From Rhodosorus marinus CCMP1338 (Eukaryota; Plantae; Rhodophyta): a stretch of 64,000 nucleotides of DNA. Shown here piece by piece: positions 1 through 37,928 of this stretch. Each line of letters begins with the position of its first letter. The first letter of the stretch is position 1. The notes beneath the pieces were generated by a model. It saw only the letters and a list, made by a program, of their open reading frames with translations. It made no database searches and had not been told where the DNA came from. The translations under genes were made by a program, and so were the position numbers. The stretch is from NCBI GenBank assembly GCA_029953675.1, contig JAMWBK010000003.1:434001-498000 (forward strand), given 5' to 3'.

Positions 1-1372
1 GAAAGGACAAGCTACTGGACGAGAAGTATAATCATTATGAAACGCATGTGAGAAGCACTGACGTAGATCGAACACTAGTCTCTTCAATGGCAGTCATGGC
101 GGGATTGTATCCAGGACGATCAATAGCCGTAAGTTGTGCCAGCATAAGGAAAAATGTTATTACGTTATTTTTCATGTCTAATCATGTCCGCACACGACGC
201 CATCTAGCCCGGATTCGACGGAACTGTACTAGTCCCAATTCACACAGTGCCTTACGCGACGGATGCTTTGATGGACGGATCAGCCAGTAAGCACTGTCCA
301 AGGTTCAACCGAGCAGCTACAGCGGCGCTCAATTCCAAGACGATTCGAAACGCGATTCTGTCTGACCGCAAATTCGCAAGCTCGTTGGCCATCCTCGCGA
401 ACGTGACTGGGGATAGAATGCGCGCTATGCCAGGCACGGTATCATCAAAGCAGAAAAGTGTACGGCTTTGGTTTGCGGGAGGGATTATTCCTAACCTTTC
501 TCACCGCCCACGTCATTTGGTAAACAGTCCCTGGTTTCCTTAGTAACGTCGTTGAGAGACTTGAGGCTATGCCAACGTGCGCACAACATGACCCAGCCAA
601 AAAACGTGACCCAATGGGATTCCAAGCTTGAAGATTTGACTACGCGGATAACCAATGCCAAGTGGGGATCAGCTCACATGGGTGCTCTGGTCGGAGGTCG
701 TGCGCTGCGCGCAGTTGCAAATCGATTCAAAGCTACGGTGGCTGTGTATCATCACGAGCAGTGGGCGCTTGAGAAGATGAACGAAGAGTGCAACGCAAAA
801 GGAAGCGACAGTGACGAGGATGGGGGCTGTCCGAGAAAACTCGCCGTGTATACAGGACATGACACAACAATTTTTGATCTCAGAGCAGCACTAGGCGTTG
901 ACATCACCGAGCCTGGAGTCGTCCCATATGTGTCGCACCTAATTTTCGAACTTGAGTAAGTCAGCTCCTAAGAAACTGCTTCATTTTTTCCTTCCAAGCT
1001 AAGTAGTCATGGCTTCTACTGTTCAGGGGGGATGGGAAGAACTTCACAGTCAGCCTTCTGTCGGGGAGCTTCCTCAAGAAAGCGACGCCGTTAGCAGGGC
1101 CCTTCTGCGGGGGCAAGAGCACGTGTTCGTTGGACAAGTTCCTCGCCTACGTTGAGAGGACGGTTCCGATGGACATCGATAAAGCGTGCTCTGTGACTAT
1201 TGAACAGCTCAGCAACGGCCAACCGGGCTCTACCGAAACGACGACTAGCTCATTCGTTCCACAGCTGCTGAAGACGGGCTTCATTACTGTGGCCGCGATT
1301 GTCGTGGGTGCAGTAGGTGCCCTACTCATCTCAGCTCGCTTGAGAAGATCCCGGTACAACCGAATCGACTGA
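1..1372 (+). CDS. Histidine acid phosphatase (lysosomal/vacuolar type), 5' end outside the window, C-terminal transmembrane anchor
   Basis: Motifs RSTDVDRTLVS, VPIHTVP, catalytic YTGHDTTI, CSLDKF, then a hydrophobic helix (FITVAAIVVGAVGALLI) before the stop at 1372. GT-AG introns at about 129-207, 461-527 and 957-1025. Confidence 0.85.
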
Positions 1373-2537
1373 TCCACTTTTGACCACTAGAGGGCGAATT
1401 CTCGAAAGGTTCTACCCCGAATCCTTGGCTGACATCACTCAACGAGTGGAGATCGATCTTATACTTTTCCTGAGCTGACTAACTTGATAATCACAAGATT
1501 GTTCTAAAAGATGGCATAGCCGAATCGAGCAGTTCTTGGTATCTGCACGAAGCCAGCTCCTTGTTAGCGGCAAGGTCGCTCCGCTTTCGTTGGGTAGCTC
1601 AGTATACCGTAACGAGTAAGGGGATATGAAACCACTTCCACGTGTGTCCTGTAAGACCTTGTTCCGACTTTCTACAGGATGTTGAACTTCGCCAGTCGAA
1701 GAGTGGCACCTTCAGTCGCAACGGTCTTTCATGGTTCACAGTAGTGGCCTGTCCCAACACCCAGCTATCTGGGACAACTGTTGACTACAAAATGCCATCT
1801 CTGCAGCTTCCCCACTCGACGAAAGCCCTCAACGCTCGGTGGGGTGCGATCGACGGGATTTTTAGTAAGCATCAGATGATATATGTTAAAACGTTGTTGT
1901 CAAGGGTCTTAAATCTGACCATCATCACACTGACCAAAGACCCTTCCTCGTCTTTGACCAAACAGTCGTGTAGACTTCCCTGCCTTAATCTAGATCGGGC
2001 ATATCTAAAAAGAACATTTTTTTCCAGCTACTTCTTTTTTTAAGTTATCTGTTTTAAAGTAGTATGGATTAATATTCAAAAAAGTATTATTAGTAAGGAG
2101 TCCAGACTAAAAATACCAATAAGGTTTAAATGAAGTACATATTGAGTCTAATTTACGAACTACAAATTTCGTCGTGTTGTCAGCCATGTCGGAGCTCTCC
2201 TCGCCCGGGGGGCGCCGGCTTCTGATGACAACAAGGGTATGACTATTCTGTTATATAAGCAGAAAGATAGGTATTGAGAACATAATTCCAAGGAATCGCT
2301 TCCTGCTTATGGAAACGTGACTGTGTTTTTTGAACCCGTTTGTTGAAGCGTTTACGGTCTGCTCAGTTGTCCTCACCCGACGGCACGGGATGGAGATTGG
2401 ATAAGATCGTTGGGATTGATGTGACAACGGATGTGGACGTGCATGTGAACCCCTGCGTGTAGAACTGAAGATCCTGATCATCGCTTTGCGTTGATTCTTA
2501 TTTAGTGGGATCTATTGAGACATCCGAGATCACAGCG

Positions 2538-3503
2538 ATGGCGTGGATTGGATTCTGTGCTCCTTTGCCAGACTGGAAGCAAAAGAATTTACGAAGAGCC
2601 AGTGTAGTTGCACGATGCTCGATTTCAGGGGACGACGGGTTGGATAGGAACCGGCGGTTTCTGCTGAGGAGCACAGGATTGCTTCCGTTCTTGGCTCTAC
2701 CTGGCGGCTCGTTTGCGGGTGAAATAACTGAGCAGACGATCGTTGGCAAGATTGAAACCGAGGGATGGTCCAGGACAAATAATTACAGGTTGAACTCTGA
2801 GGATGTGTTCTACCCAGAATGGATGGCGGGAATCTGGAGCTCGGCTTCTATGTTAACTGGAGTAGAGAGTCCTGCTGGCGAAACAGTTTTTGGGCCGCCG
2901 GGTAGTCTGGACAATGCCAGGAAGGTATGAAACTTTTTCGACTGTGCTCTTTGATCGACGTTTCTTACGGCTGAAAGTTCGATCTTATTGAATCAGGGCA
3001 TAGGAAATTCGATCAAGTACGACGTCCGATTTCGGCGAAAAGCGGGAAATATCGTCTCCGACCGACCGTACAACGTAACGCAGATCTCCCGTGCAATAAT
3101 GGGTAAGGACTCCGTTCTGTCAGTTGTCGATAACTACGCGAATGTGAACCGCTTGAGGCTCGAGTTGCTTCCTAGCGCATCCGGAGGCATCTCCTTCATC
3201 GTGGATATAAGAGTCCTTGGACGACAAGTTGAACCCTCACTTGATGGAAAATCCTTCTGTTGCTCGGAGTTGATCAACCAGACCGTGACTCCCGTTGCCG
3301 ACGGACCATCACGTTCTGCCCCGCTTGTCAAAGACGTAGAAACAGCTACATGCTATCGCTACATATCCGATGATCATTTGGTGGCTTCCATGAAGAACTC
3401 GGTGTTCTTCCCTAGAGGAGATCCGAAGTCAAATGCCGTGCAAGGAAGGCCCATCGACGTCAGAACTTATCAGATCGAGTATAACAAGATCCGAGGCCTG
3501 TGA
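2538..3503 (+). CDS. DUF6816-like protein, probably plastid/thylakoid-lumen targeted (paralogue 1)
   Basis: Two exons with an intron at about 2925-2996. N-terminus MAWIGF, then RRFLL + hydrophobic stretch + SFA. Core motifs YPEWMAGIW, VRFRR, DRPYNV recur in paralogue 2. Family name is from recall, not a search. Confidence 0.6.
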
Positions 3504-3693: not shown

Positions 3694-6600
3694 TCAGAGC
3701 TTTCCATTCTTCTCATCCATGTTAATCTCATATACTGCAGCAGCTCCCATACCCGATCCGATGCACATAGAAACCACAGCAAACCGTCCCCGCCTTCTCT
3801 TCAGCTCGTTCAATGCTGACACTGTTAGCCTTGCACCTATAAAAAGAACCAAAAAGAACAATGCCTCAGAAAATAGTTTTGGAAAATAAGAATATTATGG
3901 TTGCTGGCTCATAATTGGGGAAGCACGATCTTGTTTTAGGGACCTACCGGTGGTACCGAGCGGGTGTCCGATAGCGATGGCTCCGCCGTTGACGTTCACG
4001 ATGTCTCTGTTCAGGCCCAATGTTTCAATACTGTAGTCAGCTTGGGAACCGAAGGCCTCGTTGATCTCCCAGAGGTCGATTTCTTCGGTTGTAAGGCCAG
4101 CCTTGTCGAGGACCTTCGGGATAGCGGCCACCGGGCCGATCCCCATGATGGATGGGTCCACGCCTGCCACGGCAAAGGCCTTGAAGGTACCCATGGGTTT
4201 GAGTCCTCGGCGTTTGGCCTCACTTCTCTTCATGAGGAGCACTAGAGCGGCACCGTCGCTGATCTGTGAAGAGTTTCCAGCTGTTGTGCTTCCATTTTTC
4301 TTGAAGACTGGCTTCAGCTTGCCCAGGCTCTGCATGGACACCCCGACACGAACGCCTTCGTCGCGGTCGACGACAATGTCTTTCTTCATTTCCTTTCCAG
4401 ATGAGTCCTTCAGCTTCACCGTGGTTGCAACAGGAACGATTTCATCCTTTTGCTTGCCAGAGAGCTGAGTAACTGATGCCCTCGAGTGGGACACAACGGC
4501 AAGACGATCCTGTTGCTCTCTGCTCAATCCGTACTTGGCTGTCACGTTCTCCGAGGTCTGACCCATGGTCACGTAGCAGGTCGCTGTATTTTCCACAGCC
4601 TTGGGGTTTGGCTGCAGTTCATCGTTGATGAACGGGTTCAGACTCATGGACTCCGCTCCACCAGCAAGGACGATATCATAATATCCATTCTTAATGCCAG
4701 CAACCCCATCGGCGATAGATTGCAAGCCCGAGGAGCACAGGCGGTTGACTACCTTACACGGAACGTGCTCTGGCAGCCCGCCGAGGAACGATGAAACTCT
4801 GCTCTGAACCACCGCAGAATCACCACGGCCTAGGACAGTTCCTACAACCAGGTCGCCTACTGCATCAGGTTCCACTCCTACAGTTCAAAGTAAACAATTT
4901 CGAGTATTCAGGAATGGGGGTGCTGTCTCCCTCCTCGTGAATTCCAGACCCTTGAGACCGGGTTCTTCACTTACCTGTAGTCTCCAAGCATTTCTGGATC
5001 AATGGAGCAAGCATATCATCAATTGGAGTATCCTTGAAACCGCCCCTGAGCGCCCTGCCCATTCCGGTGCGGTATCCTGCTACTACAACAACATCGTCAG
5101 GGTTTCCAAACTCTCGGTGCGGACTTGGATTGACTCCAATCGGCATATTCGCCATTGCCGTGCGTACTAGGGCAAATGAAGGTTTGAACAGTGGGAAACC
5201 ATCCGTCATACGGTAAAACTGCTCCAGCCTCTTCATTACAGGACCAGCACCACCTCGCTCGTTCATCGCCCAGAATAAGAGTCCACCTCGGAACGATGGA
5301 AACGCCATGCCTGCGCCAACAAGAAAACGCGGGTCAGCTCAAAATTCATTGACGATTGAATGCGCACCTGGAAGATCTGCAATACCCATCATGCTTCCAA
5401 TATCCACATCGCCAGGTTTAAGAGCAACTCCTTCATGCAAGAGTCTGCAGGCCTCATTTACGCACGGTAGCAGGATCATGTCCACAATGTCATCGTCTGA
5501 GACCGGGCTGTCTTTCGTCAATGCGGACGGGAACATTTGTGAGATCCTCTCAGGATCCGGCTTCCCAGGCCCCCTCACATTCTTGTCGTACGTGTAGTAG
5601 CCTTGCCCGGACTTTTGTCCTTTCCAGTTCAGCTTCAGCATTTCATTCGCGACTGACGAAGATCGCGAACGATCTGCGTAGGCCATTCCATAGATTATCC
5701 CAATTGCCGCAACAATATCCAGTCCCACTAGGTCCGCAAGTCGGAATGGTCCCATTGGCAAGCCGAAAGCCTCCAGTGCCCTGTCAATTCTGTTTTGAAC
5801 CAAGATATTTGTCGCCGTTTAGACTCTGTTAGAAGCGCTGCTAATAGCGCGGTCCAATTTAGTCGAAGACAGCACTTACATGTACGGGTTGATTCCCAAC
5901 TTGGTCGACATCAAGTCCGCGACTTGTCCTTGAGGAAAATACGTTCTGTTCACGCAAAATCCAGCGCAGTTACCAACGAGAATGGGAGTCTTTTTGATCT
6001 TCTTTGCCAGTTTCATCACGCTGTTGATCGTGCTGTTCGAGGTGGACGTCGTCCTAACGATTTCTAGAAGCGGCATCTTGTGCGCAGGAGAGAAGAAATG
6101 TGCACCGATCACGCGGCCCTGCAGGTGCGCTTTCGGAATCTGCAGACGAAGGGTCGACAATTGAACAGTAAGAAAACAAGGGCTGTAACAAGAATCCACT
6201 CCGGCTGTTCATCTAGTTCTGTTTGCTTCCATACCTTGGCGGCGATTAGATCTATGTTGATAGTACTTGTGTTCGTCGCGAGGATGCAATTGGCGTTGGT
6301 TTCTGATTCAAGGGTCTTAAACAATTCCTGCTTAAGTTTGACATCTTCCAAAGCCGCCTCAATGACTATATCCACATCCGCAAAACCCGCAAAGTCGGTA
6401 GTAACTCGAAGGAGTGCCGGCGGCGAGCTGGATTTGAGATTCTTCGTCACCCGCTTTGCGGCTGCTTCTGCAGCGCCCGGATTGATTTCCTTTATGGTCA
6501 CTTCGATTCCTGCTCGGATCATTGCCGTAGCAATGCCTGCTCCCATCAATCCGCCTCCAATAACGGCTGCTTTTCTAGGGCATTCTCCAGCGTTCGCTCC

Positions 6601-7704
6601 TACATTTTCGGGTAATCAAACATGTCAATATACTGCTCGTTTAATGCAGGTACTTTTGGCAACTTCCGCCTTAGGAACGCGTCACCCAAACACCTTACCG
6701 TCGGTTGGAACACCAGTCTTTGTGGTTGCTCGCTGAGCCAGGAAGGCGTGAATGAGCGACTTCCCAGTTGGTGAGTGGAGGAGGTCCACAAACACGCTCT
6801 TTTCCTTCAAAAGACCCTCAGTGCTACCGTGTGCAACCCCATACAGGGTCACGTCTAGGCAAGCTTGGAACTGAGGAATCTTGCCACCTTGTGAGAGTCT
6901 CATCAAGTCCTGATCTCATGTACGACCGTCCAATTAGCGGACATGCATACGAACTTTCTGGATGTACCGATTTAACCAGCTTACCTTTCCAAACTTCTGG
7001 GCTAACGCATGAGCTTCGTTTATAGGTGGCAACCTGTCAGAGTAGTCCGACGTTACGATCTTTGGCATTCTTCCGCTAGAAAGGTCCAGAACTACTTGTG
7101 AAGCTCTGTCAATTAACTGCTCCGGTGAAGCGACTGCCTCTACGAGTCCCATCTCCTCAGCCTTGACGCCGGGGACGACCTGGCTGTGGAGCATCATCCT
7201 GAGGCCATTTTCTAGGCCTACTAGTCTTGGAAGGCGCTGCGTGCCTCCATAGCCAGGGATGAGACCAATTTTGAGCTCGGGTAATGAGAATGTGGCCCCG
7301 GGTGTGGCTACACGGGCTGAGCAGCAGAGGGCCAACTCCAGCGCCCCACCGAAGCAGATCCCGTTAACCGCCGCGACGACAGGCTTGCGATGCTTCTCCA
7401 TCTCGTAGAACAAAAATACTCGAGACGGATCTTCAATCGACTCTTGGCTAAACCCTCCGAACTCATTGATATCCGCACCCGACGAGAAGAACCCATCAGC
7501 ATCATTCGCACAGATCACCACCCCACGCACATCGTCCGCATTCAACGCCTCCCGCACCTCAGCCGCAATCAACACAAGGTGCCTCCCAGACAACGCATTC
7601 ACAGGCGGGTTCTCAAACCTCACCACAGTCACACCATCCTCACGCCTTTCAGACGTCACCCGGGCACCTCCACCCAACGACCTAACCTCAGTTACGTCCA
7701 CCAT
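3694..7704 (-). CDS. Fusion protein: enoyl-CoA hydratase + 3-hydroxyacyl-CoA dehydrogenase (MFP) + 3-ketoacyl-CoA thiolase, 1,122 aa
   Basis: Exons 7704-6985, 6909-6699, 6599-6235, 6139-5880, 5789-5386, 5310-4975, 4877-3948, 3836-3694. All introns GT-AG, phases consistent, total 3,369 nt. Hydratase motifs GGALEL and LPELKIGLIPGYGGTQRL; dehydrogenase GGGLMG and GAHFFSPAH; thiolase VNRLCSSG, GHPLG and SMCIGSGMG. Confidence 0.9.
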
Positions 7705-8966
7705 CTCTCCCCCCTCCCCCCACCCGCAGTCCTTATACCCTTCCCCCCTCAAAAAAACAACCCCAAAAACCCCTCTTCACATCACCACAGATAAACCTCT
7801 CTGTTTCCAATATACTACTCTTATATACATATCTATTCACCCGCCCAGAGACAATCCAAACTTCCTCTCCCAAACTAAAACTCCATCCACACCTCCTTCG
7901 CGTCCCACCGCACCCCCACCGGAATCCCACCCCCTTGCTCCCTCCCCGCCCAAAATCCAATAACAACAAAAAAACATTAAAAACCCTCCCAATGTATCAA
8001 ATTTTTCTTAGATAGGGTATTTCGTAGAGACATGAAAAATGGGGGTAAAAAATGAAATAGATGTATATATTCATATAATGGAAATAAAAACGGCGATTTT
8101 TAGTGTTTTATGTAGGGGGGGTGATCGCTGGGAATACGTTTCTTGTTTTCTCAGTCATTTTTTGATGTATTAATTTGTATTGTATTTATATAGAAATTGG
8201 TGTGATGATATCTGGTGATGTGATTATAGAAATATGATTGGAGAAGGTGTAATGCTTTTAGGGTATAATTGGTTAGAGTTTTTTAATACATATGTTCTTG
8301 TTGAGAGAAACAGGAAGGGGTTGCGGTAGTGGCAATGGTGATATTTATCATATTAAGATAGATTATTGCCGCTTAACGAGGTCAACTAGGATTGAGAGTA
8401 AGGGGTCAACGTGAGAAGTTTGTGTTTTGGTTTTTGTTGAATTTTGGTGATGGATGAAATGATTGGGTCGTTGAGATAAATATCTCAACGTCGGTCTGTG
8501 GAAACGGAGTGGAGGATTGGGACGTTGTCAGTACTTATGTCTCCACACATGGGCTAGAACGAGTGGAAAGGGTACATGTGAGTTTGTCTATGTTACTCAC
8601 GCAGATATCTGTTTGGGTGTGCGGGGAGTAAGACTCCTTGTATTTGGATTCTCGCAACCGTCTTAATGGACGCAAAAACTGAAACAAAAAAAAAACACGA
8701 CCATATACCGTTCACGGCTATTGCTGAATTCATTGGGACACTCTCCAGTTGGGATGCGTCGGCGCTGCGCTTTTTTATTGTCGTCACTTGCTGTGGGTAA
8801 GTGCGTAAAGCGTATTGATGAACACCAAAATCCGTACCTCGGGAGTTCAAATTCGCGGCTTGGCTGGGGTCTGTTTTTGAGTTTTGACGAGGGATGGTGC
8901 TGTTCTTCTCGCCCCACCTGCAAACAAAAACACGGAGGCTCTGTTCTATCTGTCCTCTTTTTCATC

Positions 8967-11469
8967 TTAGTTTTCGCTTAGGGTTACAATGATGTCATCC
9001 TCGCTCCACGTGCGGTTTGCAGTTTTGTCGGTGCCACTCGGGTTAAGAAAAGCTGACTTCCCATTCGCGTACCCAATTACAATTTCGTTGTGATCTTCGC
9101 TGGCTGCCTTCGCGATCGACTGGTAAGAGCCAGTTTTGTCTTCTCCTAGGTACTTCGTCACTGGTCGCATCGTGACCTCACGCCCGTACTGACTCAAAAG
9201 CTCCTGAACGAGCATTCCAACGATATCAAATATGAGACGGGATACGAACTAAACGGCAGAACATCGGTAGCCTTGCTTACGTTCCAGACTTGGTTGAGGA
9301 GGGGCTCGCGCAGTGTCTCGGCGATAAGCCTAGATCCCACTTCGTAAGGATAGATCACGTTCGCGTAACCAAAGTGATCGGCAACATCGTGCATGCGCTC
9401 ATCCCAGAACTCAGCGGAAAGGTCGACCTTAGAACCATTCGCCTTAACCAGGCTCTCTATATGGGCGAGACCGGCGAGAGAATTAGCGTCGGCTCTGAGG
9501 TCCGAATCCTGCGGAAAGACGTTGGGGTTGGAGAATTTGCTCAGCGCCTTCGTGACCACATTTCCTTTCACGCGGGTAACTGTTGAACGTACTTCATCTT
9601 CCGCATCAGCACCTTGCTGGCTTGCAAGCACAATAACCTTGTTGATTGGCGCAGAGTTGAACGCCTTCTCCAGATTCTCCGGGACCACCCACCTGCCTTG
9701 GATTTGCGTAATTGAAGACTTCGACAGCTTCTTAGGCAGCGAGGTGAGCTGCTTGTCAAGGCCCAAGACGACGATTTTACTCTTCGGTGGTAAAGTTTCG
9801 TCCAGTTCCGTCAGCATGTCAGTCATGTTTCGTCTCCATCCACAGATGAGGACGTTCTCGGGCGTTTCGGTTGGCCGAACGCTAAAGCCTGAGGCAGAAA
9901 CCCCCTCTGTTCTCCGCGTAGACCCGTCTCCAATTACGAGCAACTTAGTCGCACTCGTTATCTTGAAATCGTCCTTTGCGGAGATATGCACTTGACCATC
10001 CGAGCCAACGTATCCCAAAATCGTCCTCCCAGGAAGCGAATCGTATCTATCAATGTTCGAATAGAGCTCGTCTACTAAACCCTTTCCGGACTTTGCCTCT
10101 ACGAAATCTAGCTTGGTAGCGGATTCTGCCGTCATCATCTCTCTTACAACGCTGTTCAAGCCCCTCTGAACCACAACCTGAGCTAGGTACCTGCCCAAAA
10201 GTTTGTTAGCATTAACGATCTGAACGCTTTTGGCCAGCGTGCCGTTGAGAATGCTCTCCACAATCGCCTCGTCCTTTTGGTCGTTTACGACGGCCACCAG
10301 GTTGCCCTGGAAGTCACTCGAGCTCCCACGGAATGCTAACGTCTTGCTCACAACCTGGGATACGCACATGCAGAGAGAGCAAGACACGAAACCGATCAGA
10401 TTCCTCCCTGCTACTCTCTATACAGGACAGAGCAATACCTTACGTCCTTGGAGTCTGGGTTCTCCCGATACGAAGAATCAGACAAGAAAACGATCGTCTT
10501 GGCATCCATTGCCCGAACCCTTTCGAGATCAAATTTGACCAGCGGGTTCCCCAAGCGGACGTACACTTTACCGCCTCTGTCAGACCCGAGTTTGTCCCTG
10601 ACCGCGGCGATTACTTCATCGGGGGGGTGATTGGTTATGACAGCAACCTTCGATCCATTTCCAACAACTCTAGAAAGCGCGAGTGGAGCGCTCGAGTTCC
10701 AACCGTTGACGACGACATGGTTTGATACGATGGCGGGGATGCGCATGTTCGGGAATGAATTGACAGCATCCTCAACGGTCTGCGTGACCATCCCGACTAA
10801 TATCCCGAAGAAGACCATGCCAATGCTGGCCAGAAAGCAGGAAACCACTCTGGTGGGGACAGTTGCGAAATCATCTTCGAACGGATTTACCTAGAAAGAG
10901 ATTATCGAACGATGTGTCAGGTTTTGGCGTTAGCATGGATCGGTTACGGCAAGCCTTACGATTGCTCTAATCGCCCTCCAGACGGGGGAGTCCACTTCAC
11001 CCTCTTGATCCACCATGGCAAACAAGTACCCTCCGAGTTTGGCGAAAGCCGCACATACGACCAGCAACGAAAGCACTTTGGCAACTGGGCTCCACATGAT
11101 AAACTCCCCAAACCAGAATGAGAGAAGGTGGTTGATATTCGGCAAGAACGCCAACGGCACTGCCGGAGCGGCAACCATGGCCAATGAACTGTTCATGCTC
11201 GATCTCCCAAGAAGTTGGTAGATCGCCGCCCTTCTCACCGTCGCGAACACAGCAACGGAAATCGCCGCGGAGACGAAAAACTTCATCCGATCATACTCCG
11301 GTCGTCCAGGCTGAGACCCAGAGACGGACATTCTCACCGGTTCCATCCGCGCTATAGCCCCCAATTTCCCCACTCTAACACCACTACGGATCCCAAAACC
11401 ATCGCGACTCACTCCAACCTGCCGCAGACTCACCCCGAAACCCCCAACAAAGCAGACCTCACCCATCAT
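8967..11469 (-). CDS. CASTOR/POLLUX/PEC-like cation channel with two RCK domains, probable plastid transit peptide
   Basis: N-terminus MMGEVCFVGGFG rich in G/R/S/V. Several TM helices, then SNHVVVNGWN, GNPLVKFDLERV, second RCK PENVLICGWRRNMTDMLTELD, and C-terminal EIVIGY..FLNP. Multiple short GT-AG introns. Confidence 0.75.
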
Positions 11470-17901: not shown

Positions 17902-20900
17902 CTAGTTAAGATAGCCTCGACAATTCTTCGACCTACACAGGCAAGAAATCTTCTCGTCGTCGTCCTCGAGCTCAAACTTGTAGTCGTATGTGATTTCCTC
18001 CCCGGGCGCGAGCCTTCGTTTGCTGTAAAACACAATCTTCGGTTCCTTTTGCACCTCAATGATGCGCGCATCGACGTTGGGTTCACAGCTGTGGTTGATA
18101 TATCGGGACAGTGCACCGTTCCTTGTAGCATCCACGACGGCTTCCTCGCTCACCCGGAACATGTACGAATCGCCCATTCCCAATCGCTGATACATCCTTT
18201 CCCTCGAGTCGGCGACACTGTTCCTGACGAGTTCGCCTATATACTCCACAACATACTCGCCGGCCTCGATAGACTCAACCGCGTAAAGGCCAAGACCGTG
18301 AATTCTCGACTTGCCAGCCCTGAGGTTCTTCCTCTGCGTCTTCAGAGAAAGCTTGCTCAACAGAGAGGATACTTCACAGTGGAGTCCGGCGTTCCTGCGT
18401 AGGCCTCTCACCGCCCCTCTCTTCCAAGTCTGGTGGGCAGAGTCTTTTATCTCGATCGAAGGTAGGTCTTCCACTACAGATGACTTCATCAAGGGATCCA
18501 CCTTACGATAAGGCTCCGTGCGAGCGCAACCGCTTGGGTTCTCAATAAGAGGCTCCTCTCGCGGCCCCTCAGCATCCGAAGCGGAATCCTCGGCTTCCTC
18601 GCTGCTCACTCCCTCAGAAACCTCGGACACAGCCTCCTTCAGCTCCGGAGACAACCTCTTTCTCAGTCTAGACGAAATATCTTCGCCAGTGGGGACGCCC
18701 TCGACGATCAGCTCCTCCGTGATAGAACCAGACGTCTCATCATCGTCGCTTCCCTGCGGCTTCTTCCGCTTGTACCTCGAGCGCCGTGCTTCTCGCGGGA
18801 GGTGAGTTTTTCCAACCGGAATCTCCCTTCGCTCAGCAGTTCCTTCCTTGCCTGGGATTCCCTTCTCAATGCGTTGCACCTCGGTCTGTTTTCCTTTCGC
18901 ATCTCCCGGCTGCTGCGCGTCGACATCGCCCTTCTTAAGCGCGTACTGGAAGCCTAGCTTTGGCAGGGTATTCAGCATGGCCGAAAGCGATGAAGTCCTA
19001 ACTCGAGATCGCTCATTCTCAGTAACCGTCTTCGAAACGCAGTTGACAGCCTCATTATCTACAATGTCACGAATTTCCTTGAAGACGGCTTCTTTCAGTA
19101 CACGCCTAGCCAGGCTGCAAGTATCTTCGAGCAGTTCTTCTTTGCTGATTGGTGGTCGGGTGACCTTTCCTAGCAGATACATCTCCTCCCCACGAGAAAT
19201 CTCGTAGGTGTGCATGAAAACTCCAAATCGACTCCCTCGGATCAGACGATCTTCATCGTCCGCTCCTCGTATTGATTTGTGGCAAAAGTCCCTCCTACCC
19301 TTGGACGTGAACACGACGATCCAGAACGGGCCGGTGCTCTGGACTTTGATACACCCATACTTCACGAAAAACAATTTCACGTCCACCTCCTTCACGTGTA
19401 CTGGAAGCATAGCCACTCGCAAGGCTGGTAGACTGGGAACGCGATTGTCCTCGCCGGCCGTGAGATTCCTCGCATGCTTCTGAGTACTCCCTTGATCCTC
19501 GTCCCCTAGCTTGCTGTGTAGTTGAGCTTCTTCCCGCTGTTTTCGCTGCTTTTCTTGCTCTTCCTTCATCTTTCGCTTCTTCTCCTCAGCTTGTTCAATC
19601 TGTTTCTGTCTCTCAGCGGCCTTTTCAAGCTCTATAGTTTTCCTACGCTCTTCGTCCTCTTGTAAGCGCTTCACCCGGGCTGCCTCCTCGTCCTCGTCAC
19701 GCTTTCGTAGTCGTTCAAGCTCAACATTTGCTTTCTTAAACAAAGGATCAACTTCAATCTCAAGTGAGCGGCCGAGGAACTTCCTCCCACGGAAGGCTTT
19801 CAACGCAACCTCTGATTCGCGCCTGGAGCAAAACCTGACATGCGCTATGCCGGCATGTGCTCCTTTGTGTCGATAGACTTTGACCTCGGCAACCTTGCCG
19901 TAGTTTGAGAACTCCTGCTGAAGGAACCTCTCGGTGACATTGTTGTTCAAATTCGACAGGAGTAAGACGCGCTCGTCATCAGTAGGATCGTTTTCGTCCC
20001 TCCCATAACGCGGGAGCACGCCAAGAAGTTTCCTCACGGGGCCCGACGCTCTTTCTCGCGGGTCAGCCAATGGAAGCCAAGAGTTCGAGCCCTGAGCTGG
20101 CACTCCGACATCAACGTATCCCCGAACACTGTATTTCCGGATACCTTTCTGCGAATCCGAGCCTATTCCTACGAAGCGCCAATCGTCCCCTCGCAGCGTG
20201 CTTAAACAGGCCACAGCTTCACCGGTGGAGAGCTCTCCCAGGATACGCTTGAGAGCCACAACGCTGCTCTCCCTCGTATCCTGCGTACCAGGTACTTCTT
20301 CTTCAATATCCATGTCATCACTATCGTCATGCTCATCCCCCGCCAGTTTGTGCGGCTCAGGAGGGCCAGGAGGGCCCATGTATATGTTCACTTCGTTTGC
20401 TGCAGTAGCAGAAACCAGTTCAGGCTTTCCCGGGACCGCGTCGATCTGAAATCTAGCCTGTGCGAATACGGTACTCCCCGAAGCCTTTGGTTCCTTGATT
20501 GTGGCTATGAGCGTCGTCATCCCAGGCCCTTTCTCCTGGGAGGTCTCAGCGACTTCGCTCTGTGCTTGGACGCCGCTGGCCTGTATCTCATTCTGCTTTG
20601 TCTGACGCGCCATCTCTGAGAACGGATTCGTCGTCCTCCGCGGCTTGCTGCTGTCACGCCCCCGAATCATTCCCATTCGAACTGGCTGGTGGTCACGGCT
20701 AAGCACGTTCTTCCCGATTCCCGTGGCCTCGAGTCGCTTCGATGGGTTTTGAACTGTAACCCCTCTTTCGGGTTCCATGCCGTTGAGCTGTCCGCTAAAG
20801 GCAAAGTAAGAGGGCTGATCATTCCTGCCCTCAGCATCATCGCGGGGTGCAAGCTCGGCTTCTGTTGAGTTCAGAGAATCCTGGAAGCCGTTTGGTGCAG

Positions 20901-22203
20901 GCCTCTTCTCCTGAACGCCCATTTTCTCCGGTAGGCGGCTCTCTTCGTTAATATCAGCCCCTCTCGGAGATGATAACGCGACGTACTCGCTTCTACCGTG
21001 GCTGTCTGCATTCTCGAACACGTTATTGGAGGACTTTGACATCACAGCCTCCGTGTCACTACCAAAATGCGAAGATGACGTGGGGGGGGACGGTTTCTCC
21101 AATTTTTCTCGTTCTGTCTCCTGAGCATCCACTGCAGGTTCTTGCTTTTGTTCCACATGACTCATATTAGTCTTCGCGACCTGCGCGAAAGAGGCGCTTT
21201 CCGCAGCGGAGTGATCGTTCGAGGGAGCGCTGAGTCGTGAGTTTCCTTCCCCGCGCTCGACAGCCACCTGTTCACGCGCGGGCTCGATGCAGGGGCTGGT
21301 CAACCTTCCCGGATTTTCGCTCTTCCGCTCAGGTTGAGGACTACGACTCCGGCTCCGACTTAAGCTTCTGCTCCTGCTTCTACTCACACTTCGGCTGATA
21401 CTCCGACTCCTACTTCGGCTCCTACTCCGACTTCTACTCCGACTTCTACTCCGACTTGTACTCCGGCTTTTGCTTCGACTTAAGCTCCGACTTACGCTTC
21501 GAACCCGGCGGAGAATACTCCTTCGATTCCCACTCCGGCTGTTGCTCCGACCTCTACTTCGACTCCTGCTCCGGCTCCTGGCGGCGGTTCTACCCAGAAT
21601 TCCTGCGCTCTCCCTCCAATCATTTCCCGCCGGGCCTGCATTCAATCGGCGTGTTGGTGGTCGAATGGGAGACCGGCTTCGACTGCGGCTGCGACTTCGG
21701 TTTCGCCTGAACCGGACAGGACTAGGAGGGATGTTCGGATTCCTTGTCCTTGGAGGCACGAAACCCCTTCCAAGAGGGGCAGCCTGTGGCGCGCTGTGTC
21801 TATGTCCATGGAGTTGCGCATTCCTCGCAGTCTGTATTCGTACACGAGCTCCTGGGGCAGGAGGAAGTTTGATGGTGTTGCGTCCGACCATCATCACGTT
21901 CCCTGGAGGTGGAACTGGACGCGTAAACCTTCGGATAGGTTTGGCAATCGGATTTCTCCTGTTATCCCTAATATCCCTCTGGCCCCCCCAACCTCTCCTT
22001 AACGGTACGTGGGGATCGAAGGGACGGTGATATCGTGGACCTGGCCTAGGCTGCCCTGTCGAAAGCACCTCACGCCGCGGGTTGAAGGTGGGCCTCGGGT
22101 TCCCGAGAGCCTTCCGATCAGCAACGACCTCTCCGTCTTCGACGATTTCACCGTCATCATTTCGACGCTCATTTACAGCCCTCGGTGCCGCCCGGGGGTC
22201 CAT
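17902..22203 (-). CDS. SET1: SET1/COMPASS histone H3K4 methyltransferase, 1,433 aa, intronless
   Basis: SET domain GKSRIHGLGLYA..EYIGE..RYINHSCEPN..EEITYDY, post-SET CLCRSKNCRGYLN, WIN-like GCARTE, RRM (LLLSNL..GIAHVRF), N-terminal RS-rich tract. Confidence 0.92.
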   Translation of the reverse strand: MDPRAAPRAVNERRNDDGEIVEDGEVVADRKALGNPRPTFNPRREVLSTGQPRPGPRYHRPFDPHVPLRRGWGGQRDIRDNRRNPIAKPIRRFTRPVPPPGNVMMVGRNTIKLPPAPGARVRIQTARNAQLHGHRHSAPQAAPLGRGFVPPRTRNPNIPPSPVRFRRNRSRSRSRSRSPIRPPTRRLNAGPAGNDWRESAGILGRTAARSRSRSRSRGRSNSRSGNRRSILRRVRSVSRSLSRSKSRSTSRSRSRSRSRSRSRSRSRSISRSVSRSRSRSLSRSRSRSPQPERKSENPGRLTSPCIEPAREQVAVERGEGNSRLSAPSNDHSAAESASFAQVAKTNMSHVEQKQEPAVDAQETEREKLEKPSPPTSSSHFGSDTEAVMSKSSNNVFENADSHGRSEYVALSSPRGADINEESRLPEKMGVQEKRPAPNGFQDSLNSTEAELAPRDDAEGRNDQPSYFAFSGQLNGMEPERGVTVQNPSKRLEATGIGKNVLSRDHQPVRMGMIRGRDSSKPRRTTNPFSEMARQTKQNEIQASGVQAQSEVAETSQEKGPGMTTLIATIKEPKASGSTVFAQARFQIDAVPGKPELVSATAANEVNIYMGPPGPPEPHKLAGDEHDDSDDMDIEEEVPGTQDTRESSVVALKRILGELSTGEAVACLSTLRGDDWRFVGIGSDSQKGIRKYSVRGYVDVGVPAQGSNSWLPLADPRERASGPVRKLLGVLPRYGRDENDPTDDERVLLLSNLNNNVTERFLQQEFSNYGKVAEVKVYRHKGAHAGIAHVRFCSRRESEVALKAFRGRKFLGRSLEIEVDPLFKKANVELERLRKRDEDEEAARVKRLQEDEERRKTIELEKAAERQKQIEQAEEKKRKMKEEQEKQRKQREEAQLHSKLGDEDQGSTQKHARNLTAGEDNRVPSLPALRVAMLPVHVKEVDVKLFFVKYGCIKVQSTGPFWIVVFTSKGRRDFCHKSIRGADDEDRLIRGSRFGVFMHTYEISRGEEMYLLGKVTRPPISKEELLEDTCSLARRVLKEAVFKEIRDIVDNEAVNCVSKTVTENERSRVRTSSLSAMLNTLPKLGFQYALKKGDVDAQQPGDAKGKQTEVQRIEKGIPGKEGTAERREIPVGKTHLPREARRSRYKRKKPQGSDDDETSGSITEELIVEGVPTGEDISSRLRKRLSPELKEAVSEVSEGVSSEEAEDSASDAEGPREEPLIENPSGCARTEPYRKVDPLMKSSVVEDLPSIEIKDSAHQTWKRGAVRGLRRNAGLHCEVSSLLSKLSLKTQRKNLRAGKSRIHGLGLYAVESIEAGEYVVEYIGELVRNSVADSRERMYQRLGMGDSYMFRVSEEAVVDATRNGALSRYINHSCEPNVDARIIEVQKEPKIVFYSKRRLAPGEEITYDYKFELEDDDEKISCLCRSKNCRGYLN

Positions 22204-23507
22204 AGTACCCTATTCTCGGCACGCCCAAAACAACCCCCCCCACCCGGCCTTAAGCCGACGCCCCCCAAATAAAAAACCCCCCAATTCCCATTTATCAGAA
22301 ACCAGAGGGAAGAAAAAAAAATTATGAACCCAACAACCCAACAAGAGAATTCAGAAAGCGCTCCTCTCTCACTTCAACAGTAACCACCAGAACAGCTCAT
22401 TCAAAACCAGTCAACCTTCCTCGTCAACTCCGCCTCCCCTCTCCGAAAACTCACCAAGAAAACTACACCCCCTCAGAACCCAAACCTTCTGACAGAGTTA
22501 TCAATCTCGTTCTTGCTCATTGGAAAAACAAATAACATTATTCTTGCTCCTTGAAATACAACACAAACATATCCTAGTGCTATGACATTTGTTTGCTTCT
22601 CTTAAGAAAGCCCTTTTCCATCTGGCTTTTCTTCACCGTCCCCACCTTCCTCCTCGTCATTTAGAAACGCTCCTTCTTCCCGCGTCCAAGAGAAATCCTT
22701 GAAATTATTGTCAAAAACCCACACATTGACTATCAGCCTAACACGGTGGGTTTTTCCAAGGATTTTCAGAGGGGCTTTCCATGTCCTTAGCTTCTAAAGC
22801 CAAAGAGGTGATCAGTATAGCATTAGATGCCTGCTGTCATGTACAGTTTGTGGCTAAGAAGACCGCCGTTGTTGATACCCGTTGAAGCAACGTGCTTTGG
22901 TTTGCTACCCTTGATGAAGACATTGGGACCTTGGGGAGACAATAGCTGTTTTGACGATGTTTTTTGTTACGCCGTTATAGTTTTAGGCTCTCTGGAAGGT
23001 CAGCTGTCTTGTCTCCTGAACGCGGAGCATTAGCACGTATAAGCGCAATAGATGCATAATAAGCAAAAAAAATCCAGCGCTGAACTGGAGTGCTCTCCGG
23101 GAGCGGTGATCCACTTGTCATTGAGGTCCGATTCGACTTCAGTTCTGGCACGCCTTGGTTTTCGTGAGTGTGTTTGCGACATCGCTGACAGTCACTCGCG
23201 TTAGATCTCTTCTTTGAGTTCTGTGCTGTTGGTTTGCCATGGCGTTCTGACCCCGAATATGTTTGTTGAGACCCGCCAGGCCTGTTTGGCCAGCTTCCTC
23301 ACAGAGTATTTTTCTCCGAGTTGATGATGATGATGGTGATGGTTAAGAACAAGTCTGAATGCGTTAGACCATGAAGTAGGAACTTACATCCTCTCACCAA
23401 GAGTCCGAGGTCGTGGTGCTCTGAAGAAGAATTCTCGCCATCTGCTTGACTCAGTTTCAGCACTGGACTTCTTGCTTAATGTGAGGTGGACGAGTTCGTA
23501 ATGGTGA

Positions 23508-30200: not shown

Positions 30201-30903
30201 CCGTCGTCGGAATAGAGTTTCTAGACAAGGTCCGCAGTCGGTTACCGTCAAGATTTAGCTTCTTCAACTTTGGAAAGTTCCATACGTCCTGGGGAACCCT
30301 TTCCAGCAGGTTTGCTGATAAATCAATCTCATTAACCTTGCTCTTTTTCTTGAACTTCGAAAAGCTCTCCTCCGCTTCATCATCGTTTAGGCCGAGGTTG
30401 CTCCCATCCAACACCGTGCCTCTCAGCACAAATTCTGTTCGGCGAACATTGTCCTCCGGCAAAATCTCCTGAGAGGGTGTCTCTGTCGGGTGCATGTTTT
30501 CCTCCGGCAAACTCTCCTGAGAAGGTGTCTCTGTCGGGTGCACATGTTCCTTCGGCAAACTTCCCTGAGAAGGTGTCTCTGTCGGGCGCATGTTTTCCTC
30601 CGGCAAACTCTCCTGAGCAGGTGTCTCTGTCGGGTGCGCATTTTCCTCCGGCAAACTATCCCGAGCAGGTGTATCGGTTGGGTTCGCAGTTTCCTCCATT
30701 AGTCTCTCTCGAGCAGGCAATTCTGCTTGGCCCACATTTTCCTCCATTAATCTCTCTCGCGCAGGTAACTCCGTTGCGCTCAAGTTTTCCTCCATTAGCC
30801 TATCTCGAGCAAGTAACTCTGTTCGGCCACTACCTCCCACCGCCGAACGCGCCTGGGCACGTTCGGGCTCGTTCGCCTCCTCCATGCCTTTCTCCTCACA
30901 CAT
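24251..30903 (-). CDS. Giant protein: 16-aa repeats + LRR domain + long coiled coil + C-terminal CBM20 starch-binding domain, 2,150 aa
   Basis: Exons 30903-29552, 29451-29328, 29227-24251; two 100-nt GT-AG introns keep the frame. LRR units such as IDLSANLLERVP and LNLDGNRLRTL. CBM20 signature VTF..G..LGEW..EYKY..WEIGTNR. Confidence 0.85.
30439..30822 (-). repeat. Coding tandem repeat, 8 x 48 bp (16 aa, e.g. TETPSQESLPEENMHP)
   Basis: Visible in both the DNA and the translation. Confidence 0.9.
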
Positions 30904-37900: not shown

Positions 37901-37928
37901 ATTCCTCCTCGTTATCCTCTTCATCCAT
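34907..37928 (-). CDS. VPS16: HOPS/CORVET subunit Vps16
   Basis: N-terminal W..VEDRNYRK..ARCAGPIAL, QLSWCGNDAV, C-terminal helical region (PYVDASHVAM..LAKLLI; FVRACL). Last exon spliced as NPHDRARALAQCG...KKLSSR*. Alternative ATG at 37985. Confidence 0.85.

What the first reader, a model, noticed from the sequence alone, without database searches (positions are those of the whole stretch)
3694..7704. Single-chain beta-oxidation enzyme: MFP fused in frame to 3-ketoacyl-CoA thiolase
Seen: exon 5310-4975 carries the MFP C-terminus (GMAFPSFRGGLLFWA...FKPS) and runs without a stop into the thiolase N-terminus (PDDVVVVAGYRTGMGRALRGGFKDT). Eight exons splice to 1,122 aa, and the hydratase Glu motifs, NAD-binding loop, dehydrogenase His and thiolase Cys/His/Cys are all intact. 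Established: these three activities are normally on two polypeptides (bacterial FadB/FadA, mitochondrial HADHA/HADHB, separate peroxisomal MFP and thiolase). Inference: a covalently linked trifunctional enzyme that could channel substrate. I could not check whether this fusion is already annotated in red algae.
Basis: partly seen in the sequence, partly recalled or inferred. Interest (0 to 1): 0.85.

Follow-up and report, generated by a model that had tools for sequence, protein, structure and literature searches.

The report
Red-algal fused MFP–thiolase β-oxidation gene
The gene is real and encodes one 1,122-residue protein that joins three fatty-acid β-oxidation enzymes, but it is already a deposited Rhodosorus marinus gene model and this fusion was described for red algae in 2016, so it is a sound but not a new finding.

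Summary
Eight GT-AG exons on the minus strand (7704-3694) give 3,369 nt and 1,122 aa. Exon 5310-4975 runs without a stop from the end of the multifunctional protein (MFP) into the start of the thiolase. All catalytic residues are invariant across 65 homologues.

The product is 100% identical to GenBank KAJ8906392.1 of Rhodosorus marinus, so the same model is already deposited. Two intronless contigs from a close relative (92% nt identity) join exactly at my exon borders and carry one ORF across the junction. Cyanidioschyzon-type genomic contigs hold the fusion as one uninterrupted ORF.

The fusion is known. The C. merolae protein is named a "fusion protein" in GenBank, and Mori et al. 2016 (PMC4928187) called the three-domain MFP a red-algal feature.

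Both halves are of the peroxisomal plant type (AtMFP2, AtKAT2). Most red-algal copies end in a PTS1-like tripeptide (peroxisomal targeting signal 1), here -GKL. Red algae are reported to lack the PTS2 (targeting signal 2) import route that thiolase normally uses. The likely function is a PTS1-imported, thiolase-dimerised single-chain enzyme for β-oxidation steps 2-4. Substrate channelling is untested.

Novelty: already known. Interest is low to moderate.

The parts
6985..7704 (-). Exon 1 (aa 1-240). Start codon at 7704-7702. Holds the enoyl-CoA hydratase/isomerase (crotonase) domain, Pfam ECH_1 aa 21-209 (about 7644-7078), with catalytic E123 and E143.
   Evidence: Block 1 of the cDNA-like contigs ends at 6986.
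6699..6909 (-). Exon 2 (aa 241-310). Helical linker domain between the hydratase and the dehydrogenase.
   Evidence: cDNA block 6909-6698.
6235..6599 (-). Exon 3 (aa 311-432). [quoted passage not shown]
   Evidence: cDNA block 6600-6235.
5880..6139 (-). Exon 4 (aa 433-519). Dehydrogenase catalytic H446/E458 and N496.
   Evidence: cDNA block 6141-5880.
5386..5789 (-). Exon 5 (aa 519-654). C-terminal dehydrogenase domains (Pfam 3HCDH aa 492-586, then the second helical repeat).
   Evidence: cDNA block 5793-5379.
4975..5310 (-). Exon 6 (aa 654-766), the junction exon. It carries the end of the MFP, the linker and the first strand and helix of the thiolase in one open frame.
   Evidence: ORF 4967-5308. 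cDNA block 5311-4974 is 338 nt against 338 nt, with no gaps. dN/dS 0.12.
5096..5179 (-). Linker, aa about 698-725 (SFALVRTAMANMPIGVNPSPHREFGNPD). It takes the place of the MFP C-terminal tail and of the thiolase PTS2 presequence.
   Evidence: The alignment to AtMFP2 ends near aa 700, and the alignment to AtKAT2 starts near aa 723. The stretch from P697 to D726 is 29-31 residues in 53 of 57 red-alga-type sequences. AlphaFold2 pLDDT is 87-95 over aa 701-730.
3948..4877 (-). Exon 7 (aa 766-1076). Bulk of the thiolase, with C813 (acyl-enzyme Cys), the NEAF motif starting at N1038, and H1070.
   Evidence: cDNA block 4878-3946.
3694..3836 (-). Exon 8 (aa 1076-1122 plus the stop at 3696-3694). Thiolase C1100 (second catalytic Cys) and the C-terminal tail.
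   Evidence: The cDNA block starts at 3838.
3697..3705 (-). C-terminal tripeptide G-K-L, a candidate non-canonical PTS1 (peroxisomal targeting signal 1).
   Evidence: 53 of 57 red-alga-type homologues end in [SAGC][KR][LMI], and -GKL occurs in 8 clusters. -GKL is a functional PTS1 in a fungal enzyme (bioRxiv 10.1101/524025). Function in this organism was not tested.

Best explanation
This is the Rhodosorus marinus ortholog of the red-algal MFP-KAT fusion (C. merolae CMR380C). One nuclear gene gives one spliced mRNA and one 1,122-aa polypeptide. A plant-type peroxisomal multifunctional protein (2-enoyl-CoA hydratase plus L-3-hydroxyacyl-CoA dehydrogenase) is joined by a linker of about 28 residues to a peroxisomal-type 3-ketoacyl-CoA thiolase.

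Shown here: the gene structure, the single frame, the domain order, the intact and conserved catalytic residues, spliced junction-crossing transcripts in a close relative, and purifying selection on both halves and on the junction.

Inferred:
1. The protein carries out steps 2-4 of each β-oxidation cycle.
2. It forms at least a homodimer through its thiolase domain, because thiolases are obligate dimers. This would give an assembly with the composition of the bacterial or mitochondrial α2β2 trifunctional enzymes.
3. It is imported into peroxisomes by PEX5 through its C-terminal -GKL. The fusion buries the MFP's own PTS1 and removes the thiolase's N-terminal PTS2 presequence. A single new C-terminal signal then serves both enzymes, which suits a lineage reported to lack PEX7 and the PTS2 route.

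Substrate channelling between the active sites is plausible but untested.
For: - Gene model and frame.
- Domains.
- Identity with GenBank KAJ8906392.1 (R. marinus), 1122/1122.
- Intronless contigs L001 and L002 (92% nt identity) align in eight blocks that end at my exon borders and carry one ORF at 2-3367.
- An uninterrupted 3,438-nt ORF encodes the same architecture in Cyanidioschyzon-type genomic contigs.
- dN/dS is 0.12 overall, 0.17 for the hydratase part, 0.15 for the dehydrogenase part, 0.07 for the thiolase and 0.12 for the junction exon.
- Catalytic residues are invariant in 65 fusions.
- The closest solved relatives are AtMFP2 2wtb (E 2.6e-155) and AtKAT2 2c7y/2wu9 (E about 5e-124). 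Both score above bacterial FadB/FadA and mitochondrial HADHA.
- The AlphaFold2 model has pLDDT 89.7 and pTM 0.88 with a well-ordered linker. Its MFP part superposes on 2wtb with a TM-score of 0.90.
- C-termini are PTS1-like in 53 of 57 red-alga-type sequences.
- Standalone plant MFPs in the hit list end in SRL, SRM or ARL, and a standalone thiolase (P0160) carries an N-terminal RINTVLGHF PTS2.
- PEX7 and PTS2 cargo are reported absent from C. merolae and red algae: PMC7710942.
- Prior description of the fusion: PMC4928187.
Against: - No transcript, protein or enzyme data exist for R. marinus itself in what I could reach. The transcript evidence comes from a relative whose product is 94% identical in protein.
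- -GKL is non-canonical at position -3.
- The one localisation experiment on this family failed to show peroxisomal targeting. In C. merolae, whose protein ends in -AAL, GFP carrying the C-terminal peptide was not peroxisomal, and the protein was absent from the peroxisome proteome (PMC4928187).
- The absence of PEX7 was not checked in R. marinus.
- The dimer and channelling claims rest on general knowledge of thiolases and trifunctional enzymes, not on any result here.
- The tools gave neither model coordinates nor predicted aligned errors, so the distances between active sites are unknown.
Confidence: 0.8

Rival explanations
1. Precursor polyprotein. The fusion is translated and imported as one chain through its single C-terminal signal. 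A peroxisomal protease then cuts the linker, so the working enzymes are a separate MFP and a separate thiolase.
For: From memory, not tested here: mammalian SCPx (a thiolase-SCP2 fusion) and MFE-2 are processed inside peroxisomes by Tysnd1. The linker has a strikingly constant length of 29-31 residues and conserved RP and G positions in red algae, which could mark a recognition site.
Against: AlphaFold2 places the linker with pLDDT 87-95 and gives a whole-chain pTM of 0.88. This suggests an ordered, packed connector rather than an exposed cleavage loop. The red-algal linker consensus contains no conserved Cys of the kind I recall preceding plant PTS2 cleavage sites. No protein-level data exist either way.
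Confidence: 0.12
2. A cytosolic, or at least non-peroxisomal, single-chain β-oxidation enzyme, as Mori et al. proposed for C. merolae. On this reading the C-terminal -GKL is not a working signal.
For: In C. merolae the fusion was not peroxisomal with either N- or C-terminal GFP constructs, and it was missing from the isolated-peroxisome proteome (PMC4928187). -GKL departs from the [SAC][KR][LM] core.
Against: The Cyanidiales are the exception: their proteins end in -AAL or -AML, without the basic residue. The other 53 of 57 red-alga-type sequences keep x-[KR]-[LMI] at the extreme C-terminus, while the preceding residues vary. That pattern is what selection for PTS1 would produce. -GKL recurs in 8 clusters and works as a PTS1 in a fungus. 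Both halves are most similar to peroxisomal enzymes.
Confidence: 0.2
3. Two products from one locus. An internal promoter or alternative start (for example Met706 or Met709 in the linker) would give a free thiolase, and the full-length frame would be incidental.
For: In-frame ATG codons lie in the linker (MANMPIGV). Internal starts cannot be excluded without 5'-end data from this organism.
Against: There is no stop codon anywhere between the halves. Transcript-like contigs from a close relative run continuously from the MFP start region through the thiolase. Transcriptome-derived homologues from several red algae are full-length or cross the junction (P0026, P0057, P0064, P0066; P0141, P0142, P0146). 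The linker Met residues are not conserved.
Confidence: 0.04
4. Artefact. Two neighbouring genes were merged by a wrong gene model, or a sequencing error hides a stop in the junction exon.
For: None found.
Against: The junction lies inside one exon, not across a predicted splice. The relative's contigs match that exon base for base in length, 338 against 338 nt with no gap, and keep the frame. The same junction is present in more than 60 homologue clusters, including intron-free genomic ORFs.
Confidence: 0.01

Closest known systems
Red-algal three-domain MFP (C. merolae CMR380C, BAM82571.1, named 'fusion protein of glyoxysomal fatty acid oxidation tetrafunctional protein, and ...'; also the Porphyridium purpureum 'AIM1' and the Chondrus crispus 'Fatty acid beta-oxydation multifunctional protein')
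   Same: The domain order is the same (ECH, 3HCDH_N, 3HCDH, Thiolase_N, Thiolase_C), as are the junction, the linker length of 29-30 residues and the catalytic residues. Identity over the full length is 46-58%. Red-algal copies are monophyletic in both halves, with NJ bootstrap 99 and 98.
   Different: The differences are only at ortholog level. The gene here has seven introns, whereas the Cyanidioschyzon-type gene has none. The C-terminus here is -GKL, against -AAL in C. merolae and -SRL in Porphyridium, Chondrus and Galdieria.
Plant peroxisomal MFP2/AIM1 (PDB 2wtb) together with plant peroxisomal thiolase KAT2 (PDB 2c7y, 2wu9)
   Same: These are the best solved relatives of each half (E 2.6e-155 and about 5e-124). 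The folds match (TM-score 0.90 to 2wtb) and the catalytic motifs are the same.
   Different: In plants these are two separate polypeptides. Standalone plant MFPs in the hit list carry a C-terminal PTS1 (SRL, SRM, ARL), and a standalone thiolase (P0160) carries an N-terminal PTS2 presequence. Here both signals are gone from those positions and a single C-terminal tripeptide remains.
Bacterial FadBA and mitochondrial HADHA/HADHB trifunctional enzyme complexes (PDB 1wdk, 6tnm, 8bnu, 4b3h, 5zqz, 6dv2)
   Same: They bring together the same three activities. The α subunit is homologous to the MFP half (E 1e-66 to 1e-95), and P. fragi FadA is homologous to the thiolase half (E 1e-74). A dimer of the fusion would have α2β2 composition.
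   Different: The complexes are non-covalent assemblies of two gene products. Both halves of this protein are closer to the peroxisomal MFP and KAT than to FadB/FadA or HADHA, and HADHB does not appear among the best 60 thiolase matches. No solved chain covers more than the MFP-sized part of the model; the best TM-score normalised to the query is 0.57.
MFP-thiolase fusions outside red algae (Andalucia godoyi ANDGO_06968, Balamuthia mandrillaris, Heterolobosea sp. BB2, and the eukprot entry tig00000692)
   Same: They have the same domain order and the same junction position, and are 41-46% identical to the window protein.
   Different: They have no C-terminal PTS1-like tripeptide. Four of eight instead carry an N-terminal extension with a PTS2-like nonapeptide (RREVLLSHL, RRELVLSHL, RQTVLLGHV). 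Their linkers are 25-44 residues long. They do not group with the red-algal fusions in simple NJ trees.

Membership tests
Red-algal MFP-KAT fusion (CMR380C type) | ECH, 3HCDH_N, 3HCDH, Thiolase_N and Thiolase_C in that order on one polypeptide | tested here: met
   Pfam domains at 21-209, 320-489, 492-586, 727-984 and 991-1111. The precomputed architecture is the same in more than 70 homologues.
Red-algal MFP-KAT fusion (CMR380C type) | Full-length orthology with the described red-algal proteins, in a red-algal host | tested here: met
   100% identical to an R. marinus GenBank protein. 46-58% identical over at least 97% of the length to the Cyanidioschyzon, Cyanidium, Galdieria and Hildenbrandia proteins and to both Porphyridium proteins, and 54-56% identical over 79-95% of the query to Chondrus, Pyropia and Agarophyton, whose deposited models are shorter. 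The red-algal clade is recovered with bootstrap 99 and 98.
Red-algal MFP-KAT fusion (CMR380C type) | The fusion is expressed as one mRNA | tested here: met
   Intronless contigs L001 and L002 from a 92%-identical relative carry one ORF across the junction. Transcriptome-derived homologues cross the junction. This was not tested with reads from R. marinus itself.
MFE-1 / plant MFP (hydratase plus L-3-hydroxyacyl-CoA dehydrogenase) | Crotonase domain with two catalytic Glu, and a HACD domain with a GxGxxG NAD loop and a His-Glu pair | tested here: met
   E123, E143, G325-G330, H446 and E458 align to the same motifs in 2wtb and are invariant in 65 sequences.
MFE-1 / plant MFP (hydratase plus L-3-hydroxyacyl-CoA dehydrogenase) | Hydratase and dehydrogenase activity on acyl-CoA substrates | not testable with these tools
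   Needs an enzyme assay.
Degradative peroxisomal thiolase (KAT/ACAA1 type) | Thiolase fold with the Cys / NEAF / His / Cys catalytic set, and closest similarity to peroxisomal thiolases | tested here: met
   C813, N1038-E-A-F, H1070 and C1100 are invariant. The best PDB matches are AtKAT2, sunflower thiolase and human ACAA1.
Degradative peroxisomal thiolase (KAT/ACAA1 type) | N-terminal PTS2 presequence | tested here: not met
   The thiolase part starts at the first β-strand (DDVVVV), directly after the linker. No PTS2-like motif occurs in the first 80 residues of any red-alga-type fusion.
Bacterial/mitochondrial trifunctional enzyme complex (FadBA, HADHA/HADHB) | Separate α and β subunits forming a non-covalent α2β2 or α4β4 complex | tested here: not met
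   This is a single chain. Each half is closer to its peroxisomal homologue than to FadB/FadA or HADHA.
PTS1 cargo protein | C-terminal tripeptide of the [SAC][KR][LM] type that PEX5 recognises | tested here: inconclusive
   The -GKL ending fits at positions -2 and -1 but not at -3. It is conserved in 8 clusters, and 53 of 57 relatives have [SAGC][KR][LMI]. -GKL is functional in a fungus. No localisation data exist for this protein, and the result for the -AAL protein of C. merolae was negative.

The most novel reading that the evidence does not exclude
The fusion is an import device as much as a catalytic one. Joining MFP to thiolase buries both original signals, namely the MFP's C-terminal PTS1 and the thiolase's N-terminal PTS2. 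Each lineage then fitted the fused protein with one new terminal signal. Red algae, which are reported to lack PEX7, use a C-terminal PTS1. Andalucia, Balamuthia and a heterolobosean use a thiolase-like PTS2 presequence at the far N-terminus. On this reading the red-algal fusion would be a concrete example of the mechanism of PTS2-to-PTS1 cargo transition that PMC7710942 calls 'yet unknown'. The ordered linker would hold the domains in a fixed trifunctional-enzyme-like arrangement capable of channelling. I found no paper in the searchable library that makes this link or notes the non-red fusions.
Probability: 0.35. Interest if true: 0.45.

Novelty: already known. Interest (0 to 1): 0.28.

Why it matters
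As a discovery it adds little. The gene model is already in GenBank, the C. merolae ortholog has long been annotated as a fusion, and a 2016 paper named the three-domain MFP a red-algal trait.

The protein itself remains uncharacterised. I found no enzyme assay and no structure, and the only localisation result is a negative one in an atypical species. A natural single-chain enzyme for steps 2-4 of β-oxidation would be a convenient object for studying substrate channelling, because the 1:1 stoichiometry is fixed and there is only one gene to express. It could also be useful in pathway engineering.

The pattern of targeting signals across lineages offers a testable account of how a PTS2 cargo can survive the loss of the PTS2 import route.

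Tried and rejected
- My first exon borders, picked by eye, gave a frame full of stops.
- A brute-force search over all intron combinations timed out. A per-gap, frame-aware scan replaced both attempts.
- The merged-gene or hidden-stop artefact was tested and rejected.
- Membership of the FadBA or HADHA/HADHB complex family was considered and rejected, because both halves are closer to the peroxisomal plant enzymes.
- A single origin of all MFP-thiolase fusions was tested with NJ trees of each half. Red algae are monophyletic, but a clade of all fusions was never recovered (0 of 100 bootstraps). The method and the unnamed outgroup sequences are too weak to call this independent origin, so the question stays open.
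- The fold search against the PDB found no chain covering both halves. It confirmed the MFP fold and added nothing on the arrangement of the domains.
- Literature searches on Andalucia godoyi peroxisomes and on single-polypeptide fusions in algae turned up nothing beyond Mori et al. 2016.
- A C. elegans paper listed for 'GKL' had no such term in its held main text.
- I did not type PEX7 from memory to look for it in red algae. The absence of PEX7 rests on the literature for C. merolae only.
Full report
**1.

The gene lies on the minus strand. ORF listing shows a chain of open pieces from 7752 down to 3694. My first borders, picked by eye, were wrong, and a combinatorial search timed out. A frame-aware scan of each gap then gave one clearly best intron per gap. 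Each has a GTAAG, GTATG, GTATT or GTAGG donor and a CAG or TAG acceptor.

The exons are 7704-6985, 6909-6699, 6599-6235, 6139-5880, 5789-5386, 5310-4975, 4877-3948 and 3836-3694. They give 3,369 nt and 1,122 aa with one terminal stop. ATG 7704 is the first ATG after an in-frame upstream stop.

Exon 5310-4975 is open throughout. It reads from the end of the multifunctional protein (...PLFKPS), through a short connector (FALVRTAMANMPIGVNPSPHREFGNP), into the first strand of the thiolase (DDVVVVAGYRTG...).

Pfam finds ECH_1 (21-209), 3HCDH_N (320-489), 3HCDH (492-586), Thiolase_N (727-984) and Thiolase_C (991-1111), with E-values from 2e-21 to 1e-66.

**2. Identity of the sequence**

The spliced product is 1122/1122 identical to GenBank KAJ8906392.1, 'hypothetical protein NDN08_002885 [Rhodosorus marinus]', which UniRef names 'Enoyl-CoA hydratase'. 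The window therefore matches the published R. marinus nuclear genome, and the same eight-exon model is already deposited as one protein.

Other ORFs in the window are ordinary eukaryotic nuclear genes: a SET plus RRM protein, a CBM20 protein, a Vps16 homologue and an LRR protein.

**3.

*Transcripts.* The closest cluster-mate (P0001, 94% identical) is encoded on two JGI contigs, L001 and L002. On each, the gene is a single ORF at 2-3367.
- Aligned to the window, these contigs break into eight blocks whose ends fall on my exon borders. All seven introns are absent.
- The junction exon is matched 338 nt against 338 nt with no gap.
- L001 continues into the convergent downstream gene and skips an intron there too.
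- These are therefore spliced transcript assemblies from a relative that is 92% identical at the nucleotide level, and they cross the junction in one frame. The sample description is not available to me, so calling them cDNA rests on the missing introns.

*Hidden stop or merged model.* The junction lies inside one exon. Cyanidioschyzon-type genomic contigs carry the whole architecture as one uninterrupted 3,438-nt ORF of 1,145 aa, so the fusion does not depend on any splice prediction.

*Selection.* Between the window and L001, dN/dS is 0.12 overall. It is 0.17 for the hydratase part, 0.15 for the dehydrogenase part, 0.07 for the thiolase and 0.12 for the junction exon. The linker alone has too few changes to judge.

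**4. Catalytic competence**

The following positions are invariant in alignments of 21 and of 65 full-length fusions:
- hydratase E123 and E143;
- the NAD loop G325-G326-G327-x-M329-G330;
- dehydrogenase S422, H446, E458 and N496;
- thiolase C813, N1038-E-A-F, H1070 and C1100.

The same motifs line up with Arabidopsis MFP2 and KAT2 in the PDB alignments. Activity itself cannot be tested here.

**5. What kind of enzymes were fused**

The MFP half is closest to Arabidopsis MFP2 (2wtb, E 2.6e-155). Rat peroxisomal MFE-1, E. coli FadJ and FadB, P. fragi FadB and human HADHA follow well behind.

The thiolase half is closest to Arabidopsis KAT2, sunflower thiolase and human peroxisomal ACAA1 (E 1e-114 to 5e-124). 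P. fragi FadA is far behind, and HADHB is absent from the best 60 matches.

So this is a fusion of the two peroxisomal, plant-type enzymes. It is not a covalent version of FadBA or of the mitochondrial trifunctional protein.

The alignment to MFP2 ends about 22 residues before the MFP2 C-terminus. The alignment to KAT2 begins at the first strand of the mature enzyme. The connector therefore replaces the MFP tail, which ends in a PTS1 (SRL, SRM or ARL) in the standalone plant MFPs of the hit list. It also replaces the whole thiolase PTS2 presequence. A standalone thiolase in the hit list, P0160, shows the usual RINTVLGHF motif followed by about 20 more residues before the enzyme begins.

**6. 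Distribution and prior knowledge**

The word-indexed search returned more than 70 clusters with the same architecture and a length of 1,100-1,200 aa.
- Named red algae include Chondrus crispus ('Fatty acid beta-oxydation multifunctional protein'), Porphyridium purpureum ('...AIM1'), Pyropia yezoensis, Agarophyton chilense, Hildenbrandia rubra and Galdieria phlegrea.
- Cluster look-up added Cyanidium caldarium and C. merolae.
- Transcriptome entries come from Porphyridium, Timspurckia and Compsopogon.

The C. merolae protein is named in GenBank 'fusion protein of glyoxysomal fatty acid oxidation tetrafunctional protein, and ...'.

In the exhaustive search of 50%-identity representatives, 96,049 proteins match at E<=0.001. 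Only three representatives are full-length fusions (P0011, P0061, P0075), alongside four junction-spanning fragments. The architecture is thus rare overall and concentrated in red algae. Red-algal fusions are monophyletic in NJ trees of each half, with bootstrap 99 and 98. This fits one fusion event before the red-algal classes diverged.

**7. Likely mechanism**

*Shown:* one gene, one frame, intact active sites, conservation, and expression as one mRNA in a close relative.

*Inferred from established enzymology:* the chain performs hydration, NAD-dependent oxidation and thiolysis. Because thiolases are obligate dimers, it is at least a homodimer, with the composition of an α2β2 trifunctional enzyme.

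AlphaFold2 with the 65-sequence alignment gives mean pLDDT 89.7 and pTM 0.88. The pLDDT over residues 701-730 is 87-95. The connector is therefore predicted to be ordered and the domains to sit in a defined arrangement. I could not inspect coordinates or predicted aligned errors. No PDB chain covers more than the MFP-sized part of the model. Channelling remains a hypothesis.

**8. Targeting**

Of 57 red-alga-type sequences, 53 end in [SAGC][KR][LMI]. The counts are AKM 11, AKL 9, GKL 8, SRL 6, SKM 5 and so on. The residues just upstream vary. This is the pattern expected for a selected PTS1.

The window protein ends in -GKL, as do Pyropia and six other clusters. -GKL is a proven PTS1 in the fungal enzyme MpaH' (bioRxiv 10.1101/524025).

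The exceptions are the Cyanidiales, which end in -AAL or -AML. This may explain why Mori et al. could not see the C. merolae protein in peroxisomes.

PMC7710942 reports that the PEX7 receptor and PTS2 cargo proteins are absent from C. merolae, citing earlier work, and lists red algae among organisms lacking PEX7. It calls the red-algal mechanism of PTS2-to-PTS1 cargo transition 'yet unknown'.

My best reading is that the fusion lets thiolase enter peroxisomes on a single PEX5-dependent signal. This is inference. PEX7 was not checked in R. marinus, and no localisation data exist for this protein.

**9. An observation beyond the finding**

The same architecture occurs outside red algae: in Andalucia godoyi, an Andalucia-like Logan contig, Balamuthia mandrillaris, Heterolobosea sp. 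BB2, the eukprot entry tig00000692, and three unnamed sequences.

None of these has a PTS1-like end. Four of the eight have an N-terminal extension of about 40-60 residues that carries a PTS2-like nonapeptide at residues 7-20 (RREVLLSHL, RREVLLGHL, RRELVLSHL, RQTVLLGHV). None of the 57 red-alga-type sequences has one. The shuffle expectation is 0.0008 per protein.

I relaxed position 2 of the PTS2 consensus after seeing the data, so this is a lead and not a test. These sequences did not group with the red-algal fusions in NJ trees. That analysis is too crude to decide between one and several origins.

**10. Rivals**

- A precursor that is cleaved after import is possible. From memory, peroxisomal SCPx and MFE-2 are processed this way. 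The predicted ordered linker does not favour it.
- A non-peroxisomal location is possible, given the C. merolae result and the non-canonical Gly at position -3.
- Separate products from an internal start are unlikely, given the continuous transcripts.
- An artefact is excluded.

**11. Verdict**

The finding is correct in every sequence detail and its structural interpretation is supported. It is, however, an already deposited gene model of an already described red-algal fusion.

What remains open is biochemical and cell-biological: the activities, the oligomeric state, channelling, processing and location. The targeting-signal pattern across lineages is the only part that may be new.

Noticed in passing
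window 2497-3503 (+ strand), and L001 3564-4460: A convergent neighbour gene encodes a DUF6816 protein. Its stop at 3503 is only about 190 nt from the stop of the fusion gene at 3694. The transcript-like contig L001 runs through both genes and skips an intron of the neighbour (window 2995 to 2925). The two 3' UTRs therefore probably overlap.
   Followed up: partly
proteins P0073, P0075, P0071, P0139 (not in the window): MFP-thiolase fusions outside red algae (Andalucia, Balamuthia, Heterolobosea sp. BB2) lack a C-terminal PTS1-like tripeptide. They instead carry an N-terminal extension with a thiolase-style PTS2-like nonapeptide. None of the 57 red-alga-type sequences has one.
   Followed up: partly
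proteins P0129, P0062, P0122, P0059; loci L003 and L004: The Cyanidiales copies end in -AAL or -AML, without the basic residue kept by 53 of 57 red-alga-type sequences (the four Cyanidiales copies are the exceptions). This may explain the published failure to localise the C. merolae protein to peroxisomes. In that lineage the gene is a single intron-free ORF of 1,145 aa.
   Followed up: partly
window 17905-22209 (-), 24254-29227 (-), 29539-30912 (-), 36354-37988 (-): Long open frames with Pfam hits are present: SET plus RRM_1 (1,435 aa), CBM_20 starch-binding (1,658 aa), LRR (458 aa) and Vps16_N (545 aa). This is ordinary nuclear gene content, and I made no gene models for them. The 407-aa frame at 9197-10417 (-) has no Pfam hit.
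   Followed up: no
window 7705-7990 and 8000-8500 (read on the minus strand): The 5' flank of the gene starts with a strongly G-rich, purine-rich stretch (runs such as GGGGGAGGGGGGAGAG). Further upstream lies a G-poor stretch rich in A, C and T. I did not examine either for promoter or repeat content.
   Followed up: no
proteins P0243 (1,737 aa) and P0200 (1,442 aa): Two long representatives match the query in several separate stretches: a thiolase part at 491-726 of P0243 and an MFP part at 728-1333 of P0200. They may be other multi-domain arrangements or merged gene models.
   Followed up: no
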